A program made the position numbers and the translations under genes. From assembly GCF_963506605.1 (NCBI RefSeq), contig NC_083294.1:37944001-38008000 (forward strand): 64,000 nucleotides of DNA, read 5' to 3'. The stretch's first letter is position 1; every line of letters starts with the position of its first letter. Source of the stretch: Zootoca vivipara. Its lineage: Eukaryota. This document shows positions 1 through 10,329 of the stretch, one piece after another. The notes below the pieces were generated by a model that worked only from the letters and a program-made list of their open reading frames with translations, was not told the DNA's origin and searched no databases.

Positions 1-289
1 GTGATTCCCAGGCCTCTGTGGGGCATGTGAAGAGGCACCTCTCTTTGGGGCGGGGGAGGCAGCTCAGAGACCAGGGTGGCAGTTGCAGCTGCCCAAGACT
101 TCCAAGGAGAGGAGGCTGAGGGAACCCTTCACAAGGGAGGGTGTTTCAAAAGGGGTGAGGAGCTGCCAACTCTGCAGGCAAGGGGTGACATAACTGGGTT
201 TCTGAGCCCTACAGGGGTGCTGCAGAAAGAATGTAGTGATTAACCAAACCAGGCTTATTTGTTACTTGATGCCTGTCATCTTTCTCCAG

Positions 290-3200
290 TTCAGATCCTT
301 GGTTCTGCATACAGAGGGTTATTGTTGGAAGCTCGTGCATTTGGTTCCACAGCTGCACTAGGTTTTTGGCAAACTCCTCCCAATAATACTAAATTATTAC
401 AGGTAAGAGACAAATGGTCATTCTTTGTAGCAAAATCATTCTTGCTGTAGCAAAATCATTGCCAGAAACAATCCCCATTTCCACCCCAAACCAGAGAAGG
501 GTCACAGATTGAACTATACAACTCATAGTTGATCCAGCTAGTTACAGTATTCATTTTTTCTGCACCTACAGTTTGATGAGACACTATGAGTGGTTAAGGA
601 GTGTGTGGCCCTCCAGATGTTGCTGGACTCCAATCAGCTCCAGCCACCATGGCCAGTAGTCAGAGATGATGATAAGATTCGTAGCCCCAAATCTGGACAA
701 TTTAAATATCCCTATCTCTGGGCTGTGGGGATGAAGTTAGTTTAGACTTCCTCACTCTTGTGTCTTCCAGATGTCTTGGGCTACACTTCCCATCAGCTGC
801 ATTAGAGAATTTGACCACATCCTAAATCAGGGGTGGCTAATCTGTGGTCTTCTGAATGCTGTTGAAGCTCTAACTCCCATTATCCTTGATCATTAGACAT
901 GCTGACTTGCGGTAGTGGGAGCTGAGGGTCTGACAATGTCTGGATGGCCACATATTAATCATCCCTGCTCTAAACAGCCTGTCTGTGAAGAAAGGCAACA
1001 TGTTCAGGAGGGCAATGCATCATAAGTCAGAAAGGAAGACCCACATGTCTTTTATTAAAATAAGTGGGAAGTTCAACACTTCTGATATCTGGACAGCAAA
1101 AGTGATCAAAAGTCCTAACATGGCTGGTTCCAAATGTCCAAAACAGGTTTGGGGGAACTTTAGCTCTCCAGATAATGGGATAACGGGAGTTGTCGTTCAG
1201 CCACAGCTAGAGGGGGGATGGCCCCCCACTCTTGGTCTATAAAATGCGTCAAGAATCATAACCTTCAAGATAATGCCATCAGTTTAACTCAGATTGTAAA
1301 ATTCAACATTTGAATTGGAATGTGCCTGGTTAGCTTTTAAAGGCAAACGAACCTCTATATAGGATGAATACTAGGTGGCTGCCTAAAAAAAATGTTGCAG
1401 TATTAAAAATCAGAGCAGGGACCTGGGCAATGTGGGGAAATGAATTTCGTTTACTAATAGACAGTGAAGTTATCTCCCAATATTTCTGGACCGGTTCTAT
1501 AAAAAGTGTTATGGGGTCTTGGTTATGCTTTAAAATAGATAAATTTGAGGAAGCTTATTTAAAGTGACGTTGTGTCTCCTTTTGCAGTGTTCTGGAAATC
1601 CACAAGGCGCAGTGACTCATTCTAACACAAATTTAAAACCAAGACAAGCCAGTTACACGTGGCTTCCACCAAACTCTGGCTGCCCTTCAGTAGTTATATT
1701 TGTGTAAGTTTCACATTTTTTCTAAAATATAGTTGCCTTCCCTAAATCATAATACAGTTGTGAGGATTCTTTGTCCCTCCAGATATTGCTGAAATACAAC
1801 CCTCATCCCTGGCCATTCCTGGCTTGCTTGCTAGAGTTGATGGAAATTGTAGTTCAAGGCAAAGGTTCCCCAATCCTGATCTAGATTTAAGCTCCTTTCC
1901 ATGGCTTCAGAAGTCTCTTTTGATGGCTGCAAACATTACCAGGCAATTAACAGGAGATAATTTTCTCCGTCTGCATGCTATTATTTCATTCTGCCAGGCA
2001 GAAGGCAAGTTTATTTTAAATTATGAGGGTCGTTCATTAAAGATTTCCCCTGACCCACTTCCGGTTATCATGGGTAATGTGTTAATTTGTAGCTCTGAAC
2101 TCCTAACAGTTTCTCTGATACGGGTGCTAATGTGGAGTAACGGCTGATAATGGAACCAGTTGAACGCAGGGCAGTCATAAGGTTCCTGTACTTGAAAGGG
2201 CACACACTGCAGGAAACGTTCGATGAGATGAAAGGGATTTATGGGGAGGATGCCCCATTGTAGGACGTAGTCAAGCACTGCTACTACCGGTATCATCAGT
2301 TCGAGTGTGGTCAGACTTTGGTGGAACGGCTCCCATTCCTGGGCGACCACAGTCTGTTATTGATGAAGGCACCATCCGGCAACTGGAGGCCACCATTCTG
2401 GAGGATCACTGCATAACCATTTGCCAGCTAGCTGCAGATGTCAAGATCAGTGTGGGCTTTGTAGAAAAAAATCATCCATGACCATTTGCACATGGGAAAG
2501 GTGTCCACACAGTGGGTTCCCCAGCTGCTGCCTTTCCAGCAGGAGGAATGAGTTGCATGCTTATGGGCTCGTTTGGCCATGTGTCACAAAAACCATGGCG
2601 ACTTCTTTGCCAGACTAATTACTAATTACTCCGGACAAAACATGGGTCCATCATTATGACCCAGAGACTAAATCCCAGTCCAAACAATGGAAGCACTCTG
2701 CCTCACCACCTCCAACCGTCAGCGGGCAAGATCATGCTCACGGTCTTTTGGGACCAGTGCGGAATAGCGATGATGGATTTCCTGGCAAAGGGTACCACAA
2801 TTACCGGGACATATTGTGCTTCACTGCTGCAGAAATTGTGGAAGGCCATCAAAACCGAGAGGCGTGGTATGGAGACCAAAGGTGTCTGCCTCCTGCAGGA
2901 TAAGGCCCCATTCACAACTCACATGTTGCTCAGACAGAACCATGGTCCTGTGGCCATGAAATCCTTCCTCACCCTCCTTATTATCCCAACCTTGCACCAT
3001 CAGACTTCCACCTCTTTCCAACCATGAAGTTATTTTTGAAGGGCAAGCTTTTTCCAGACGATGAAATGCTGATTTCTGAGGTCAAGTCATGGCTTCTGAC
3101 GCAACCTGCCGACTTCTACCAACGAGGTTCCCACAACTGCATAAAGCAATGGGAGAAGTGTGTGACTCTTGCTGGTAGCTATGTGGAGAAGGACTAACAA

Positions 3201-3351
3201 CTGTGCCCAGTTTCATTTGTCTCAGTCCATGGGAAGTATGTCAGGGGAAATCTTTAACCCTTGTATAATGAACTTTAGGGGCTGCATCAAAGTAATTACA
3301 AACTGAAGAGGGTTTTTAAAAAAATAATATTATTAAATATTATTAAATAAT

Positions 3352-3390
<39 letters not shown>

Positions 3391-4451
3391 GTAGGAGTAG
3401 GCAGAGCCCAATCTCTCAATATGCATTGTAATTGTGATGTCCCTTTTCCTATTCTATCAGGGCTACAGTCGCCCAGTCTCATGACATCTACTGGACCAAT
3501 GTCAAATCCAAAGTGATCTGGAGAAGTGAGTAGCTCACCACTTTGTTGTGTGAAATAAGCTCCCAGTCTCAAGGTAACATCTCCTTTGAGATTGAATAGG
3601 CCACAAGTACAGATGGCATTGGGATAAATATATCCCAGTAACACAGCCTTCACCAACCTGGTGCCCTCGATGTTAGTAACTAGAAGTCCCATCAACCCCA
3701 GCCAGCATTGCCTGTGGGATGGCTTTAAACTTGTAGTCAAACATTTGAAGGGAACAAGATTGGTGAAGGGCAATAACATCAGCTGGTATAGCTCTTTGCT
3801 TGGGGTTACTGGGTTACATGCGACTGCCTTGTTTGATAGTCTCTGGCCCTAGCAAAATCCTTAACTATGATGGAAGTTGATGAGTATACCTTTCATTTAA
3901 AACAGACACATTATTGTTGGGGGAGAAACTGAATGCATAAAACTCAAAAGATGTCAGGATGTGGTGTTGCAAATTTTATGCTTTGTGCCCCATTGGAGCC
4001 AAAAGCAACTAACATTGACTGGAAAAGATGCACAATGTATTAACGTAATTTCTGGAGCATCACTGAAAAAATGCCCAATGGTCTGAATGATGTGCCTTGC
4101 CTGCTTCTTAATGCACTAACACAGTGAGGAGCATGTGTGCTCAATGGCCATGGGATGCTGACAGATTGTTGATGGATGGGGAGGAAACAGAAAACCAGGT
4201 GAAAATGGGGAGAAATGAAATATACTGGAAAGGGCATGATTAGGGGTCTGAGAACCCAAACAGGCCCATTTCACACCACAACATTTTGTTGCAAGCTCCA
4301 CTTGTATCTCAACTTTAACCTGTATCTTCGACTCTGGCTTTCCACCATTGCAGATTCCAAAGCTACCTGTGCAGCGGAATCATTTACAAGGTCACTATCT
4401 GCTGATGCAGCAATCTTCTCTCTGCTCCTGATTTTACTGGGATACATTTAG
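290..4451 (+). CDS. Reeler-domain secreted/GPI-anchored protein (FRRS1-N/PLET1/insect defense-protein-like); last four coding exons, 5' exons lie upstream of the window
   Basis: Four AG/GT-bounded, phase-compatible exons: 290-402 (VQILGSAYRGLLLEARAFGSTAALGFWQTPPNNTKLLQ), 1588-1703 (CSGNPQGAVTHSNTNLKPRQASYTWLPPNSGCPSVVIF), 3461-3525 (VATVAQSHDIYWTNVKSKVIWR), 4354-4451 (NSKATCAAESFTRSLSADAAIFSLLLILLGYI*). Reeler hallmarks RGxLLxAR, C...AVTH, W.PP and F.ATV.Q...W are present. Hydrophobic C-terminus; AATAAA at 4527-4532. Confidence 0.85.
2022..3265 (+). mobile_element. Decayed full-length mariner (Tc1/mariner) DNA transposon in an intron of the Reeler gene
   Basis: TA-flanked imperfect TIRs (TGAGGGTCGTTCATTAAAGATTTCCCCTGAC ... 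GTCAGGGGAAATCTTTAA..CCCTTG). Transposase remnants MEPVERRAVIRFLYLKG, WVP, YDPETK, PSAGKIMLTVFWD and YPNLAPSDFHLFP, broken by stops and frameshifts. Confidence 0.9.
3352..3389. repeat. (ATG)n microsatellite
   Basis: Run of tandem ATG/TGA units seen directly. Confidence 0.95.
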
Positions 4452-5029
4452 AAACCAGCATACAGCAATTTACTTGCATTCTTTAGTAATCTGAACACAT
4501 TGTTTTGTGTAGGAGATGCATTAAATAATAAAAAGCTCTGCTCACTGCAGTGAAGACTTTCCTGAACTTGTGCTTGCTGTTTCAACTGGCATTTTGTGTA
4601 CAGCTTTTGTGCTGCTTCTAATATAATCTTTAAAACACTGGGGATTGGATAGATTATAAAAAAATACCGTAAGTGTTTACACTCCCAAGTGCATGTTTAA
4701 TGAAAACTGGGCAACATCCAGTGATGTTCATCCACTTGTACAAAGGAAACTCCCTTGTGCAACAGGACTTCTGGTTCCTCTTTTCCCCCTACAGCTCCTC
4801 ATATCCCCACAGTATCTGTTCCAAAGCATCCCTCAACTCTCCAGAGCAGATTTTGGGGCTACAGATGGAGTTGCAGAGAGAATGAAGCAGTCCTGTTGTG
4901 CAAGCAGACTTTACTCCCATGACACTGGATGTCTCAAAAAGAGCCTTAACTCACCTAAAGGGTGAAACAGGCTTGGTCGATCTTCCAGGGAAAGAATCCC
5001 ATGACACTACCATAAAAAGGCTCTGCACT

Positions 5030-5305: not shown

Positions 5306-6696
5306 ACCTAGTATCTGCTAACAGAGGCATGTTTGAGAGCAGAGCCCCTGAAACCAACTGGAGGCTCAGACAAATTCATGTGGCAAGTTCTGGTAACTTT
5401 GTCCCAGGCTATTAACAGCCTTAAGGGTCAATGTCTAATTCTTTAAACTAGGCTTAAAAGCAAACAGGCAACCTAGCCAATTGATATAAAATTGGCATAA
5501 TATGCTCCAAGTTTGAAAACCCACAAACGTTCTGTTCCGACCACTCAATTCCAGTGTCATAGATTGATTTTCTCTAGATCAGGGGTGGAGGGACCACATT
5601 CCTTTATGAGCAACCTTTGGAGTGGGGGCACACACTAGTGGTGGGCGGACCATGGGTATGACTTTCACCTTTGCACAGTAGACTACATTCCAGCCATGCA
5701 GAAGTCAAAGTTTTCTATACTCTCATACCACACATTTTTCTATCCAGGCAAGCGAGAGGCATTATTATTACAGTTCACATTCCGGCCAGGCAAAACTACT
5801 CAGGCAGGGTGAGGAACTGGCCTAGGGAAAGTCACTATGGCTGGATAGAAACCTGAAGGGCCAACATTGGCACAAAGGCCTGTTCTAGAAACATCCACAG
5901 CTTGTGAAATGGTAAATACTACCTGAGGATCCAAAGATAAAGCTGTGTCCAGGAGCACCATGCCTGCATATTTGTTCCTTCAGGAAGAGTAAAGTCATAA
6001 GCCCTAAACATAGCACTTTCATCTTATCAGGATTACGTTTCAGCTAGTTCCATCCATGTTCATGCCAAAACGGAACTTCAAAACACTGATTCAGGATAAC
6101 CACCACCTCCTTAGGTTTAGAAACCAGGGGTAAGAAACCTTTGGCCTTCCTACAGTGGCTAAATTATGACTCCCATCGGTCCTAGCAAGCTGGCCAATGA
6201 TGCAGTTCAGCATCATCTGGAGAGCCAAAGGTTCCCCACACCTGGCATAGATGGTGAAAATGAGAACAAACTGTGGCCATTATTATACCCAACTCTGCAG
6301 CTGATGTGTCCCATTGGTTTCATGTAGTAATCAAAGAGCAAAGAACAACAATCTGGCACCCATTAAAATAGGGGTAAGTCAACATGGTGCCCCCACATGT
6401 TTTGGACTAATAGTGCCATCACTCAAGCCAACAACAGCAACCATGTGTTAAGAGCAATGTATCAAATGTACCTTTCATGAAGGTCAGCATGAAAAACAAA
6501 CCCAATACAGTATTTTGTCTGTCTTGTCAACATTCTCACATTTGCATTATTTCAATCTGTATTTTATTTCTTTATTGCAATTTTATTGGTACAGTATTAG
6601 AAGCTTATTGTCCTCTCTCCTCATGGGATTATGATCAACATGCTCCACACTTTGTCAAATACATGTTTATTAAGTTGCTTTCATTGCACCATGGTT

Positions 6697-9600
6697 TTAC
6701 TTAATGTTCTCCAAACCCTGGAAAATAAAAAGTGAAGCAAATGAGTTAAATGTGTCCGCTGTGCACAACGCTGCTGCTATCAAATTACACTATATAATCA
6801 GGTTTAACAAACCTCTTTTCAAGGTGGTGTCTTCCTTAATCCTACCAACAGAAAAATACTAATTGCGCAAACACAAAGTAAGTTGCTCAACTTTTAATAC
6901 TAACAAGCGCAGGCAGGTTTGCTGTTTCCTTTGTTACATCAGGCTGCCACTGACAGAATTGCTCTGCCATCACAGAGTCTGGAAAGAAGACTCCTTAGGG
7001 CAGGAGTGGGGAACTTTTGGCCCTTGAGATGTTGCTGAACTGCAACTCCCATCAGTCCTAGAAAATACAACAAATGGTCAGGCATGATGGGAGTTGTAGT
7101 TTGGAAAGTTCATAAGTCTTTAAAGATGCCATGGGGAATCTACACAAGTAATGACAGCTGTTCTCCAACTTATGGAAGATGATCAGGAATGCACAAGAAG
7201 GGGCAGGGCATGCACGGCCATCCCTGTTTCTTTCTTCACATCATTAACATCATGTGGAGAAACACATGTCTGAAAAAGGCTCTGCTATGAGCAGAACATG
7301 CCATGCGCATTATAATATTGAACACAGAAGGATAAAAATAACATTGTGCAGAGGAACATTTAGGGGCCAAAACAAATGTAAACTGTTGTGGCATTTAGCT
7401 CCCCATCCCCACAAAAAAATAGTGTTGTGACTTTGCAACTAGACAGCAGCATGCAAGGAAGTTTGTTCAAACCAACCTTGGAGTCATAGTACTGATTTAC
7501 TCCAGACACACGCTTGTCTCTCTGCATCAGGTACCACTGATAGGTGTTCCGAGCAATTCTCTTCTCCTGGGCACATAAGAAATAAGGTGGACAATGTGTA
7601 GACAAGAGGCAGTGGGAGACAGATAAAGTGAGAAGAATTAAAGCAAAGTTGACAAAAAATGTGAAATATTGAAAAATTCAACAGATGCGTGCAGACCTAT
7701 TCCTTTTTTGAGATGAAAAGCAGACTGCTCAGTCCTGCTTCACAGCCTAGTAACGAGGCTCAGATATACACATGACAGACTATCCTTGTCATTCTTAGCT
7801 GAAGGTATGATTATTTGGATGTCATGGGCAATTCAGGGGACAACACTGTGGGGTTCAATAGATGTGGTTTAAGAAAGCCTAATCTGAACACCACTTCTGC
7901 AAACTGCAGGTGTGAGTGAGGCTCATTTCACTTAATATGCCCACCCCAAAAAGAATATATTCATAAACAAAGAAAATCAACTAGAGTTTCAGCTTTAACA
8001 TATTTGTTAATGGTTTATTTGTTAATTTAATTTTTATTAATTTTACTAAAATTTCATTTTCTTACAATTTTTTCTTACTATTATTACTATTATTATTTTA
8101 ATTTGGTGTTTGTCTGCAGACAGTTTTTCAGGTCATGTGGCCAGCATGACTTAAGCCGCTTCTGGTGCAACAGAACACCGAAACCAGAGCAGCGCATAGA
8201 AACGCCATTTACCTTCCCGCCAGAGTGGTACCTATTTATCTATTTGCACTTTTTGGCGTTCTTTCGAACTAGGTTGCCAGGAACTGGGACTGAGCAACAG
8301 GAGCTCACCCCACTGCGTGGATTCGAACCACCAACCTTCTGATTGGCAAGCCCAAGAGGCTCAGTGGTTTAGACTACAGCGCCACCCACATCCCATTTGT
8401 TATTGTTAACTACTTTTAAAATATTTATTTTCCTCTCCTGTAATACTCTACTAGCCGCCCTAGAATAAACCTACAATGAAAGTGTAGGGCAGTGGTTTCA
8501 ACCAATGTGCCGCAGCACCACAGGGTGAGTTGAATGGTGGTCAAGACTGCTGTGGGCAACAATGGCTTCTGTCCCTCTTTCCTTCCCTTCCTCCTCTGAT
8601 GCCCTCTCACGTATCTGCCTCCCAAAGGCTTGTGCGGCTGTTTGTTGCAGCAGCCCTTGCTACAAGCACCACAGGTGAATGGTGCCTCTGGGGCTGGCCA
8701 GGGGAGAGGAGAGGAGGCTGAGGGAACACTCTACAAGAGAGGTTGTTTGAGAAAGGGTGAGACGCTGTCAGCTCTGCAGGCAAGAACCGTAGAAAGAATG
8801 TACTTGGTCAAGGGAGCCATGGACTCAAAAAGGTTGAAAACCTCTGGTGTAGGATATAAATTACACAAATAAATAAAACATGTCCAGGCCTCATGTACTG
8901 TGCCTTTGTCACATTCAGACTGGGCAACCAGATGCCTATGGGAACCTAAGTAAAACACCACTATCCCAACATGTGAACCGCAGCAACTGATATTCAGAGA
9001 CATACTGCCTCTGATACAGGAGGTAGTACATACCAGTGGCTAATAGTCCTTGAAAGCATTAGCCTCAGTGAATTTGACCAACCACTTCTTAAAGCTATCC
9101 AAGCTGGTGGCCATCACTGCATCTCCCGGGAGTGAATTCCATAGTTGAAGAGTGTTTTCTTTTGTTTGCTTTGAATCTTCCAGCATTCTGCTTCATTGGA
9201 TGGCCCTGGGTTTTAATATTATGAAATGGGGGCGGGGGACGATGACACAACTCTCCCTATCCTTATGGGCTTTAAAGCCTTAAAAAGGTTTTTGTCACAG
9301 TTATTCGAAGGGCTGTCAGTTCCCACACCCAGCTGCCCATTCTCTGAGATGAGCCACCAGGTGAAGGTGAATTGCCAGGCAAAAGGCAGTCTAAGAAATG
9401 AGTCAAACATGCTGGAGCAGGCCAATGAGCCATCAAATCCAGTGTCCTTTTGCTCACAGTGGCTGCCCAGATGCATATGGGAAACCTATAAACACAAACA
9501 CAACAGCACTCTCCCTGTCATTTCCAGAAACTTATATTTGGAAGCATTGCTGCCTCTGACTGTGGAGGCACCAGAGCATAGCTATCATGGCAAGTACCGT

Positions 9601-10329
9601 AGCTTTGTCCTCCATAAATTTGTCCAATCCTCTCTTAAAGCCATCTCCATGGTAGCCCCACATCTTTGGAGTTCATTACCAACAGAATCAACATTGCAGC
9701 CCTTTCAGAAAGGTCTGAAAACAATTCTTCTTGCTAGGTTTCTCCTGAAATGTATTGCTTTCATTATTATGATTTTGCTGTTGCCTTTGATTACATTTTA
9801 GAAATTCTGGGTCACTTGCTTGTTTTCTTAGGTCTCTGAGGCCTCCTGGCGTTAATACGCAAGTACTGCACGTTGGATTTTGGGTTGCATATTAGACGAT
9901 TTCTTCAGAGAGTTTCAAAGGCGGCGTGCAATTCACTTAAAATTATTATTTACACCCAAAAGGTTCTCAGGGCAGCTTAAAGACCAGCCCCCCCAATCCC
10001 ACCAGTTTTAAGAGACCCTCTGAAAAGTCATGGCAGGCAAGGGAAAAGAACGGAGGGGGGGAGCAAACTCAAGCTCTAAAAGCCGCTGTTCCTAAATCGA
10101 TTACACACTGTACATTTAACACAAACAAGTTCTTAAAGATACAACAATTCCTAAATCAGCAATATGGGATTTCAGAAAAGGAGAGGGGAGATGGGGATTC
10201 GTGAGGAGGCGCTGACATGCCACGCACCTTGTGCCCGTTGGTGTATTTGTGGATGTAGGCGGTGGCCACGCCAGGGATGACCAAGCACACGTACATGACG
10301 CCCAAGCTAGGCAAGATCTCGTACCACAT
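6697..10329 (-). CDS. NDUFA1: NADH:ubiquinone oxidoreductase subunit A1 (MWFE), 70 aa
   Basis: Exons 10329-10228 ([34 protein letters not shown]), 7566-7477 ([30 protein letters not shown]), 6717-6697 (GLENIK*). GT-AG introns; AATAAA on the minus strand at 6666-6671; closely matches recalled mammalian MWFE. Confidence 0.97.
8103..8392 (-). mobile_element. Sauria SINE
   Basis: Same family as 16410-16766, 17452-17766, 35880-36235 and 42395-42735; tRNA-like head GGTGGCGCTGTAGTCTAAACC...GGTTCGAATCC. Confidence 0.85.

What the first reader, a model, noticed from the sequence alone, without database searches (positions are those of the whole stretch)
290..4532. Unnamed Reeler-domain protein with a GPI-anchor-type tail, tail-to-tail with NDUFA1
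Seen: four exons that the ORF track does not connect splice in phase into about 130 aa: a Reeler-like domain directly followed by a short spacer and a terminal hydrophobic stretch (AAIFSLLLILLGYI*), then a polyA signal. Known: Reeler domains occur in reelin, F-spondin, FRRS1, REELD1 and insect defense proteins; PLET1 is a small GPI-anchored protein. In human the neighbour on this side of NDUFA1 is AKAP14, and I recall no Reeler gene there. Inference: a stand-alone cell-surface Reeler protein (no DOMON or cytochrome b561 domain after it) kept in reptiles and lost or moved in mammals, possibly with an epithelial, immune or extra-embryonic role.
Basis: partly seen in the sequence, partly recalled or inferred. 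Interest (0 to 1): 0.8.

Follow-up and report, generated by a model that had tools for sequence, protein, structure and literature searches.

The report
Lizard Reeler-domain surface protein gene
The four exons are the real, expressed 3' end of a small lizard gene for a one-domain (Reeler) protein with a lipid-anchor-type tail, but the gene is already in RefSeq as "putative defense protein 1/3" and belongs to an unstudied family found from sharks to crocodilians, with no bird or mammal among the listed hits.

Summary
Exons 290-402, 1588-1703, 3461-3525 and 4354-4451 splice in phase into 129 aa. They encode the last two thirds of a Reeler domain, a short linker and a terminal hydrophobic stretch, followed by ATTAAA/AATAAA. 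One contig of a same-species run carries all three junctions (GT..AG) and continues 193 nt into 5' exon(s) outside the window. NDUFA1 (70 aa, three exons) lies on the opposite strand, with the two 3' ends about 2.1 kb apart.

The gene is not new. The joined peptide is 129/129 identical to RefSeq XP_034969090.1, "putative defense protein 1 [Zootoca vivipara]". About 150 relatives were found in sharks, chimaera, ray-finned fish (zebrafish si:dkey-251i10.2), lungfish, amphibians, squamates, tuatara, turtles and alligator. No bird or mammal is among the 120 best hits. The gene tree follows the species tree. The predicted fold matches the F-spondin reeler domain.

A C-terminal hydrophobic tail at the very end is present in 120 of 151 members, so a GPI anchor is plausible but not tested. 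I found no functional study in vertebrates. My inference is a surface glycan-binding or adhesion protein.

Two open points remain: a 2-nt loss in the tail in the RNA-like contig, and a RefSeq isoform that lacks exon 4.

The parts
290..402 (+). Internal coding exon (113 nt; the first 2 nt complete a codon begun in an exon outside the window). Encodes QILGSAYRGLLLEARAF..KLLQ, the middle of the Reeler domain.
   Evidence: AG acceptor and GTAAGA donor. Pfam Reeler profile 46-79. In the X1 spliced contig. Identical to XP_034969090.1.
1588..1703 (+). Coding exon (116 nt). Encodes CSGNPQGAVTHSNTNLK..VVIF, including the invariant Cys and the Thr-His-Ser motif.
   Evidence: Pfam Reeler profile 83-118, E 4.9e-4. 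phmmer of this exon alone finds the family. Junctions 402/1588 and 1703/3461 are in the X1 contig.
3461..3525 (+). Coding exon (65 nt). Encodes ATVAQSHDIYWTNVKSKVIWR, the last strands of the Reeler domain. Its donor GTGAGTAG carries an in-frame TAG if it is not spliced.
   Evidence: Read-through gives ..VIWRSE*, which is the C-terminus of RefSeq model XP_034969090.2.
4354..4545 (+). Last exon. Coding sequence runs to TAG at 4449-4451 (linker NSKATCAAESFTRSLSAD plus hydrophobic AAIFSLLLILLGYI), then about 90 nt of 3' UTR with ATTAAA at 4520 and AATAAA at 4527. The end near 4545 is inferred.
   Evidence: Junction 3525/4354 is in the X1 contig.
4407..4448 (+). Codons of the 14-residue terminal hydrophobic stretch, the putative GPI-attachment signal.
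   Evidence: The tail type is present in 120 of 151 family members. AlphaFold2 predicts a helix at residues 170-186 after a low-confidence linker.
4413..4423 (+). Short CT run (TCTTCTCTCTG) in which the only X1 contig across exon 4 lacks 2 nt (at 4417). This would replace the hydrophobic tail by ..AAIFSAPDFTGIHLETSIQQFTCIL*.
   Evidence: table 4 (depth 14, one contig). Unresolved: it may be an allele or a contig error.
2150..3200 (+). Decayed Mos1/mariner transposase relic inside intron 2. It is not part of the gene product.
   Evidence: Pfam HTH_48 (E 3e-5) and Transposase_1 (E 9e-14) on ORF pieces broken by stops.
6645..6717 (-). NDUFA1 last exon (GLENIK* at 6717-6697, AATAAA at 6671-6666). 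This is the convergent neighbour.
7477..7566 (-). NDUFA1 exon 2 ([30 protein letters not shown]).
10228..10329 (-). NDUFA1 exon 1 coding part ([34 protein letters not shown]).

Best explanation
These are the last four exons of the Zootoca vivipara gene that RefSeq calls 'putative defense protein 1/3'. It is the lizard orthologue of zebrafish si:dkey-251i10.2. The full protein is about 187-199 aa. It has an N-terminal signal peptide and the first third of the Reeler domain (both encoded 5' of the window), the rest of a single Reeler beta-sandwich (exons at 290, 1588 and 3461), a linker of about 18 residues, and a 14-residue hydrophobic C-terminus with nothing after it (exon at 4354).

Shown here: the exons, their splicing, transcription, identity to the RefSeq protein, the Reeler domain and fold, the family's taxonomic range, and the convergent NDUFA1 neighbour.

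Inferred (about 0.7): in the ER the hydrophobic C-terminus is cut off and replaced by a GPI anchor at a small residue in the C-A-A..S-A-D stretch. This would leave one Reeler domain tethered to the outer face of the plasma membrane.

Inferred more weakly (about 0.35-0.4): the conserved face of the domain binds a polyanionic glycan, either microbial or matrix. That face is the disulfide-pinned N-terminal C..M.P.H segment next to the invariant T-H-S. [quoted passage not shown] On this reading the protein is a surface recognition or adhesion molecule of skin-type tissues.
For: Exons in phase with canonical splice sites. Collinear Pfam Reeler hits on two consecutive exons. Full Reeler domain 1-131/131, E 3.1e-26, on XP_034969090.1, which is 129/129 identical to the joined window peptide. 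The spliced 518-nt contig has all three junctions, and its 5' continuation translates to PSFLNGQPVN-V, exactly as in the RefSeq protein. One search listed 70 family members and one search listed 120 of 156, all with PF02014 as the only domain. The gene tree follows the species tree, with the reptile clade at 96% SH-aLRT. The AlphaFold2 model has pLDDT 87.8; its best PDB matches are the F-spondin reeler domain structures 2ZOT and 3COO (E about 1e-8, TM up to 0.72). A hydrophobic C-terminal stretch within 8 residues of the end occurs in 120 of 151 members, and 110 of those have a small-residue triplet within 16 residues upstream. The tail keeps its frame and stop in Lacerta and Podarcis. Insect ligand data come from PMC10321396. 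Fish skin and fin expression comes from PMC7177938, PMC9854719 and PMC5012078. The zebrafish protein was detected by proteomics (PMC7271515).
Against: No GPI predictor or experiment was available. The lacertid hydrophobic stretch is short at 14 residues, and its omega site is ambiguous. The Cys of the conserved ATCG(A/V)E motif may instead be disulfide-bonded. The newer RefSeq model (XP_034969090.2), like models in two skinks, ends ..VIWRSE and has no tail. The only X1 contig across exon 4 lacks 2 nt inside the tail codons. No ligand data exist for any vertebrate member. Three raw-read RNA runs of this species (about 6% of each read) show no reads on the exons, so expression is restricted and the tissue is unknown. 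X1 is labelled RNA only by a guess.
Confidence: 0.8

Rival explanations
1. The protein is mainly a soluble, secreted Reeler protein like insect Hdd11/Noduler. On this view the hydrophobic tail is dispensable or is removed by alternative processing, either read-through of the exon-3 donor or a frameshift allele.
For: The current RefSeq model XP_034969090.2, and models in Tiliqua and Lerista, end ..VIWRSE*. This is exactly what read-through of donor 3525 gives. The X1 contig over exon 4 lacks 2 nt at 4417, which would give a non-hydrophobic C-terminus. The lacertid tail has only 14 hydrophobic residues.
Against: The 3525/4354 junction stands at depth 96 in X1, against about 4-5.5 for intron-3 contigs. 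The tail is kept, in frame and to the same stop, in Lacerta and Podarcis. The same type of tail occurs in 120 of 151 members from sharks to alligator.
Confidence: 0.2
2. The domain is a metal- or redox-related module rather than a glycan binder. The invariant His29 and His106 and the near-invariant Met25, held together by the Cys22-Cys96 pair, would form a metal site. This would fit the use of a Reeler domain at the tip of the ferric reductase FRRS1/SDR2.
For: H29, H106 and C96 are invariant, and C22 and M25 are near-invariant, across 61 sequences. F-spondin has E in place of the H of T-H-S. RefSeq named some family members 'ferric-chelate reductase 1-like'.
Against: No coordinates of the model were available, so the spatial clustering of these residues was not checked. 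[quoted passage not shown] This protein has no DOMON or cytochrome b561 partner domain.
Confidence: 0.12
3. It is an unexpressed relic or a chance ORF pattern.
For: No reads fell on the exons in three RNA-seq runs of the species.
Against: There is a spliced contig at depth 96. The reading frame is intact and 129/129 identical to a RefSeq model. Conservation is strong across jawed vertebrates.
Confidence: 0.01

Closest known systems
RefSeq XP_034969090.1 / .2, 'putative defense protein 1 / 3' of Zootoca vivipara, with lacertid orthologues XP_028571655.1 (Podarcis muralis) and XP_032993816.1 (Lacerta agilis)
   Same: Version .1 is identical over all 129 window-encoded residues. Podarcis matches at 122/129 and Lacerta at 124/129.
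   Different: Nothing differs: it is the same gene. Version .2 drops exon 4 and ends ..VIWRSE.
Zebrafish si:dkey-251i10.2 (LOC562682, NP_001313480) and fish 'putative defense protein 3 / Hdd11'
   Same: About 190-200 aa with a signal peptide, one Reeler domain and a C-terminal hydrophobic tail. Identity is about 45-55%, and they belong to the same orthologous group in the tree.
   Different: The fish tails look more like classical GPI signals (G/A/S triplet, charged spacer, about 15 hydrophobic residues). No functional study exists for them either.
Insect Noduler / Hdd11 / BmReeler1
   Same: Small proteins with a single Reeler domain. RefSeq takes the vertebrate names from them. The Atlas places a mollusc 'putative defense protein' cluster right after the chordate one.
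   Different: The insect proteins are immune-induced haemolymph proteins that bind LPS, LTA and beta-1,3-glucan (PMC10321396). I fetched no insect sequence, so orthology, the motifs and the absence of a tail were not compared here.
F-spondin (Spondin-1) reeler domain, PDB 2ZOT, 2ZOU, 3COO
   Same: Same fold (Foldseek E about 1e-8, TM 0.72 on the target).
   Different: Only about 18-20% identical, and the sequence profile E-value is 0.07. It lacks the T-H-S histidine. It is the N-terminal domain of a large secreted matrix protein.
FRRS1 / SDR2 (CYBDOM ferric reductase)
   Same: An extracellular N-terminal Reeler domain. Some family members were auto-named after it.
   Different: FRRS1 continues into DOMON and cytochrome b561 domains. 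This gene stops about 40 residues after the Reeler domain.
REELD1
   Same: A vertebrate gene named for a Reeler domain.
   Different: REELD1 is reported in human, goose, mallard and zebrafish, so it is present where this family did not appear. I could fetch no REELD1 sequence, so the relationship was not tested.

Membership tests
Reeler domain (Pfam PF02014) | Match to the Pfam profile above the gathering score | tested here: met
   Exon 2 alone scores 21.1 bits (cut-off 21) on profile 83-118, and exon 1 scores 13.5 bits on profile 46-79, collinear. The identical full-length RefSeq protein P0030 scores 92.9 bits, E 3.1e-26, on profile 1-131/131.
Reeler domain (Pfam PF02014) | Reeler beta-sandwich fold | tested here: met
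   AlphaFold2 pLDDT 87.8, all-beta over residues 41-155. The top eight PDB matches are F-spondin reeler domains, with probability 1.0.
Vertebrate 'putative defense protein 3' / si:dkey-251i10.2 orthologous group | About 190 aa, a single Reeler domain, and placement inside the group in a gene tree | tested here: met
   129/129 identity to the Zootoca member. It lies within the lacertid (98%), squamate (99%) and reptile (96%) clades. All listed hits carry PF02014 alone.
Vertebrate 'putative defense protein 3' / si:dkey-251i10.2 orthologous group | Conserved synteny (next to NDUFA1) in other species | not testable with these tools
GPI-anchored proteins | N-terminal signal peptide | tested here: inconclusive
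   It is encoded outside the window. By eye, XP_034969090.2 starts MAYWNSFLLFSLMAPWTTLCPSHA|FPSGAP, and the family consensus is Leu-rich before P.GAP. No signal-peptide predictor was run.
GPI-anchored proteins | C-terminal hydrophobic stretch that ends the protein, with no cytoplasmic tail | tested here: met
   The window protein ends AAIFSLLLILLGYI*. The same holds for 120 of 151 family members.
GPI-anchored proteins | Omega site of small residues plus a polar spacer of about 5-10 residues | tested here: inconclusive
   C-A-A lies 10 residues before the hydrophobic stretch, and S-A-D lies directly before it. 110 of the 120 tailed members have a small-residue triplet within 16 residues. This is a home-made rule, not a validated predictor.
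GPI-anchored proteins | Release from the cell surface by PI-PLC, or detection of the lipid anchor | not testable with these tools
   This needs an experiment.
FRRS1 / CYBDOM | DOMON and cytochrome b561 domains after the Reeler domain | tested here: not met
   There is a stop at 4449-4451, polyA signals at 4520-4532, and then NDUFA1 on the other strand. Pfam finds only the Reeler domain on the full protein.
Insect Noduler / Hdd11 defence proteins | Immune induction and binding of microbial cell-wall polymers | not testable with these tools
   Known only for the insect proteins (PMC10321396). In salmon fin the gene fell about 25-fold under sea-louse infection (PMC7177938).
REELD1 | Orthology by tree | not tested
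   No REELD1 sequence could be obtained by reference. The literature shows REELD1 in birds and mammals, unlike this family.

The most novel reading that the evidence does not exclude
Jawed vertebrates ancestrally carry a GPI-anchored, single-Reeler-domain surface receptor related to the insect nodulation factor Noduler. It would be used in skin-type tissues to bind microbial or matrix glycans (or a metal, through the invariant His/His/Met face), and it was lost independently in birds and in mammals. In Zootoca, a CT-repeat frameshift or read-through of the exon-3 donor may switch it between an anchored form and a secreted form.
Probability: 0.25. Interest if true: 0.5.

Novelty: already known. 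Interest (0 to 1): 0.25.

Why it matters
As a gene it adds nothing new: RefSeq and UniProt already hold it and its orthologues. The family as a whole is worth a small note. It is a conserved protein of about 190 aa with a single Reeler domain and a lipid-anchor-type tail. It is present from sharks to crocodilians, did not appear in birds or mammals in the searches run here, and I found no functional study of it in any vertebrate. Its database names ("defense protein", "ferric-chelate reductase-like") are borrowed and untested. Zebrafish si:dkey-251i10.2 offers a ready model for finding out what a free-standing Reeler domain binds, which could also help explain the unexplained Reeler domain of FRRS1.

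Tried and rejected
- phmmer of exons 1 and 2 against PDB sequences found nothing. The family profile reached spondin-1 only at E 0.07.
- The 38-aa exon query also hit two frog fn3-repeat proteins (P0010, P0016) and P0022. Pfam shows no Reeler domain in them, so they are chance matches to repetitive proteins.
- A tree with FRRS1, REELD1 and PLET1 was not made, because none of these sequences could be obtained by reference.
- The joined peptide was never sent to a search tool. Searches went exon by exon by reference or used database proteins. The joined translation and its alignment were made only inside scripts.
- Paper searches on 'reeler domain' with GPI, on dkey-251i10.2 and on LOC562682 gave no functional study.
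- The RNA depth peak at 502-668 and the 'joints' 627->3687 and 628->3644 are not exons. These reads are only partly laid, have loose ends on both sides and extra letters between the sides, and lack GT..AG. They are copies of a dispersed repeat transcribed elsewhere.
Full report
**Observation.** The sequence shows four segments with canonical splice sites: 290-402, 1588-1703, 3461-3525 and 4354 onward. Joined inside a script, they read in one frame for 129 residues, from QILGSAYRGLLLEARAF to SADAAIFSLLLILLGYI, and stop at TAG 4449-4451. ATTAAA (4520) and AATAAA (4527) follow. In Pfam, exon 1 matches Reeler profile positions 46-79 (E 0.11) and exon 2 matches positions 83-118 (E 4.9e-4, 21.1 bits against a cut-off of 21). 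Two consecutive exons hitting consecutive parts of one profile is not a chance pattern.

**Transcription.** Of four runs laid on window 1-5000, X1 carries the same species label and is marked RNA only by a guess. It holds a 518-nt contig at depth 96. That contig joins 399|1585 (equal to 402/1588, with 3 ambiguous letters), 1703|3461 and 3525|4354. Every skipped stretch is GT..AG. The contig runs 193 nt further 5' than position 289, on letters found nowhere in 1-289. Its last 30 letters plus the G at 289 translate to PSFLNGQPVN-V. So the signal-peptide exon and the first Reeler exon lie outside the window. Intron contigs in X1 stand at depth 2.6-5.5. Three raw-read RNA-seq runs of the species (about 6% of each read) put no reads on the exons, so expression is restricted. 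The tissue of X1 is coded and unknown to me.

The depth peak at 502-668 and the 'joints' 627->3687 and 628->3644 come from partly laid reads with loose ends on both sides. They are a dispersed repeat transcribed elsewhere, not an exon.

**Identity.** phmmer with exon 2 alone against 1.84 billion representatives found a family of proteins of about 170-200 aa. A cluster look-up names the best hit 'putative defense protein 3 [Podarcis muralis]' (XP_028571655.1). The same cluster contains XP_034969090.1, 'putative defense protein 1 [Zootoca vivipara]' (187 aa), and its later version .2, 'putative defense protein 3' (169 aa). The joined window peptide is 129/129 identical to XP_034969090.1, 124/129 to Lacerta agilis and 122/129 to Podarcis muralis. 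The window is therefore from Zootoca vivipara or something indistinguishable from it, and the gene is already annotated. The full protein carries one complete Reeler domain (profile 1-131/131, E 3.1e-26) and nothing else.

**Family range.** A word-indexed search with the Podarcis protein gave 70 hits. A profile of 61 members gave 156 hits at E <= 1e-10, of which the best 120 are listed.
- The listed hits come from chimaera and sharks, bichirs, gar, paddlefish and many teleosts, lungfish, frogs and salamanders, squamates, tuatara, turtles and alligator.
- The zebrafish member is LOC562682 = si:dkey-251i10.2.
- No bird or mammal is listed, although frog and fish orthologues at 40-55% identity are found easily.

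This supports loss in mammals and, separately, in birds after their split from crocodilians. It remains absence from protein databases within a length band of 109-348 aa, not from genomes. A quick maximum-likelihood tree of 50 members recovers ray-finned fish, amphibians, turtles and squamates each as one group, and a reptile clade at 96% SH-aLRT, with Zootoca beside Lacerta and Podarcis. This is a vertically inherited, essentially single-copy gene. The ESM Atlas gives the chordate cluster 'putative defense protein Hdd11' (225 members) as nearest, followed by a mollusc 'putative defense protein' cluster.

**Structure.** AlphaFold2 on the alignment gives mean pLDDT 87.8 and pTM 0.77. The model has an all-beta core at residues 41-155, a low-confidence linker and a C-terminal helix at 170-186. 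The best Foldseek matches in the PDB are the human F-spondin reeler domain structures 2ZOT, 2ZOU and 3COO (E about 1e-8, TM 0.72 on the target). Weaker generic beta-sandwich matches follow.

Invariant positions in the alignment include His29, Cys96, Thr105-His106, Lys112, Trp120 and Trp145. Cys22 and Met25 are nearly invariant. These form the motifs C..M.P.H and T-H-S; F-spondin has T-E-S at the second motif. I could not reach the model's coordinates, so I did not test whether these residues form one site.

**The tail.** Of 151 family members in hand, 120 end in a hydrophobic stretch lying within 8 residues of the C-terminus. Of those, 110 have a triplet of small residues within 16 residues upstream. 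The other 31 are mostly truncated or alternative models.
- Fish tails look classical, for example ..GASAGMAEEKPLLLLVICFLMLQVLG.
- Lungfish and tetrapods share ATCG(A/V)E ahead of the tail.
- The lacertid tail is short at 14 residues, but it keeps its frame and stop in three genera.

A signal peptide together with a terminal hydrophobic segment and no cytoplasmic residues is the signature of a GPI-attachment signal, so I rate GPI anchoring at about 0.7. No validated predictor or experiment was available.

**Two caveats on the tail.**
- RefSeq's newer model, and the models for two skinks, end ..VIWRSE*. That is exactly what read-through of the donor at 3525 (GT GAG TAG) gives.
- The only X1 contig across exon 4 (4354 to beyond 5000, depth 14, no substitutions) lacks 2 nt in the CT run at 4417. 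This would yield ..AAIFSAPDFTGIHLETSIQQFTCIL* without a hydrophobic tail. I had no further read call to tell whether this is an allele or a contig error.

**Neighbours.** NDUFA1 lies on the minus strand. Exon 1 is at 10228-10329 (MWYEILP...), exon 2 at 7477-7566, and the last coding exon at 6697-6717 (GLENIK*), with AATAAA at 6666-6671. The exons encode 34 + 30 + 6 = 70 aa. The two genes converge, with about 2.1 kb between their 3' ends.

**Function.** I found no functional study of any vertebrate member. The scattered data are:
- The zebrafish protein is detected in larval proteomes (PMC7271515).
- Salmon 'hdd11' mRNA falls about 25-fold in louse-infected fins and is called 'of unknown function' (PMC7177938).
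- The goldfish gene reads 0 FPKM in white skin, 23 in yellow and 9.5 in brown (PMC9854719).
- The cichlid gene is lower in egg-spots than in the rest of the anal fin (PMC5012078).

[quoted passage not shown] My best guess, as inference only, is a GPI-tethered glycan-binding recognition or adhesion protein of skin-type tissues. The rivals are a mainly secreted form and a metal-binding role for the His/His/Met face.

**Verdict.** Part of the interpretation also holds: a stand-alone Reeler protein with a GPI-type tail and no mammalian relative among the hits. But the gene is already in RefSeq under an automatic name, and the family is old and widespread rather than reptile-specific. It is an ordinary annotated gene of unknown function, so interest is low to modest.

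Noticed in passing
window 4413-4423 (site 4417): The only contig of run X1 that spans exon 4 lacks 2 nt in a short CT run inside the codons of the hydrophobic tail. If real, that animal's mRNA encodes a tail-less, presumably secreted protein.
   Followed up: partly
window 3522-3533: The exon-3 donor reads A|GTGAGTAG, so an unspliced transcript stops after two extra codons (..VIWRSE*). RefSeq's current Zootoca model and two skink models end exactly this way, which suggests a conserved tail-less isoform or a recurrent annotation artefact.
   Followed up: partly
window 2150-3200: Intron 2 holds a decayed Mos1/mariner transposase copy (Pfam HTH_48 and Transposase_1, broken by stops), followed by an (ATG)n microsatellite at about 3352-3390.
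   Followed up: yes
window 600-635 and 3640-3710: RNA reads pile up here only partly laid, with loose ends on both sides and pseudo-joints 627->3687 and 628->3644 that lack GT..AG. These are two copies of a dispersed, SINE-like repeat transcribed from other loci, not exons of this gene.
   Followed up: partly
window 6645-10329, minus strand: NDUFA1 is complete in the window as three coding exons (34 + 30 + 6 = 70 aa). Intron 1 is about 2.7 kb and intron 2 about 0.76 kb.
   Followed up: yes
That is about the share the exons make up, so they may contain the spliced mRNA of this gene or of close relatives' orthologues.
   Followed up: no
alignment A1 (family), residues 22-29 and 105-107 of XP_034969090.1: The C..M.P.H and T-H-S motifs are (nearly) invariant from sharks to lizards, but the His of T-H-S is Glu in F-spondin. 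This is a candidate ligand or metal site that, as far as I could find, nobody has examined.
   Followed up: partly
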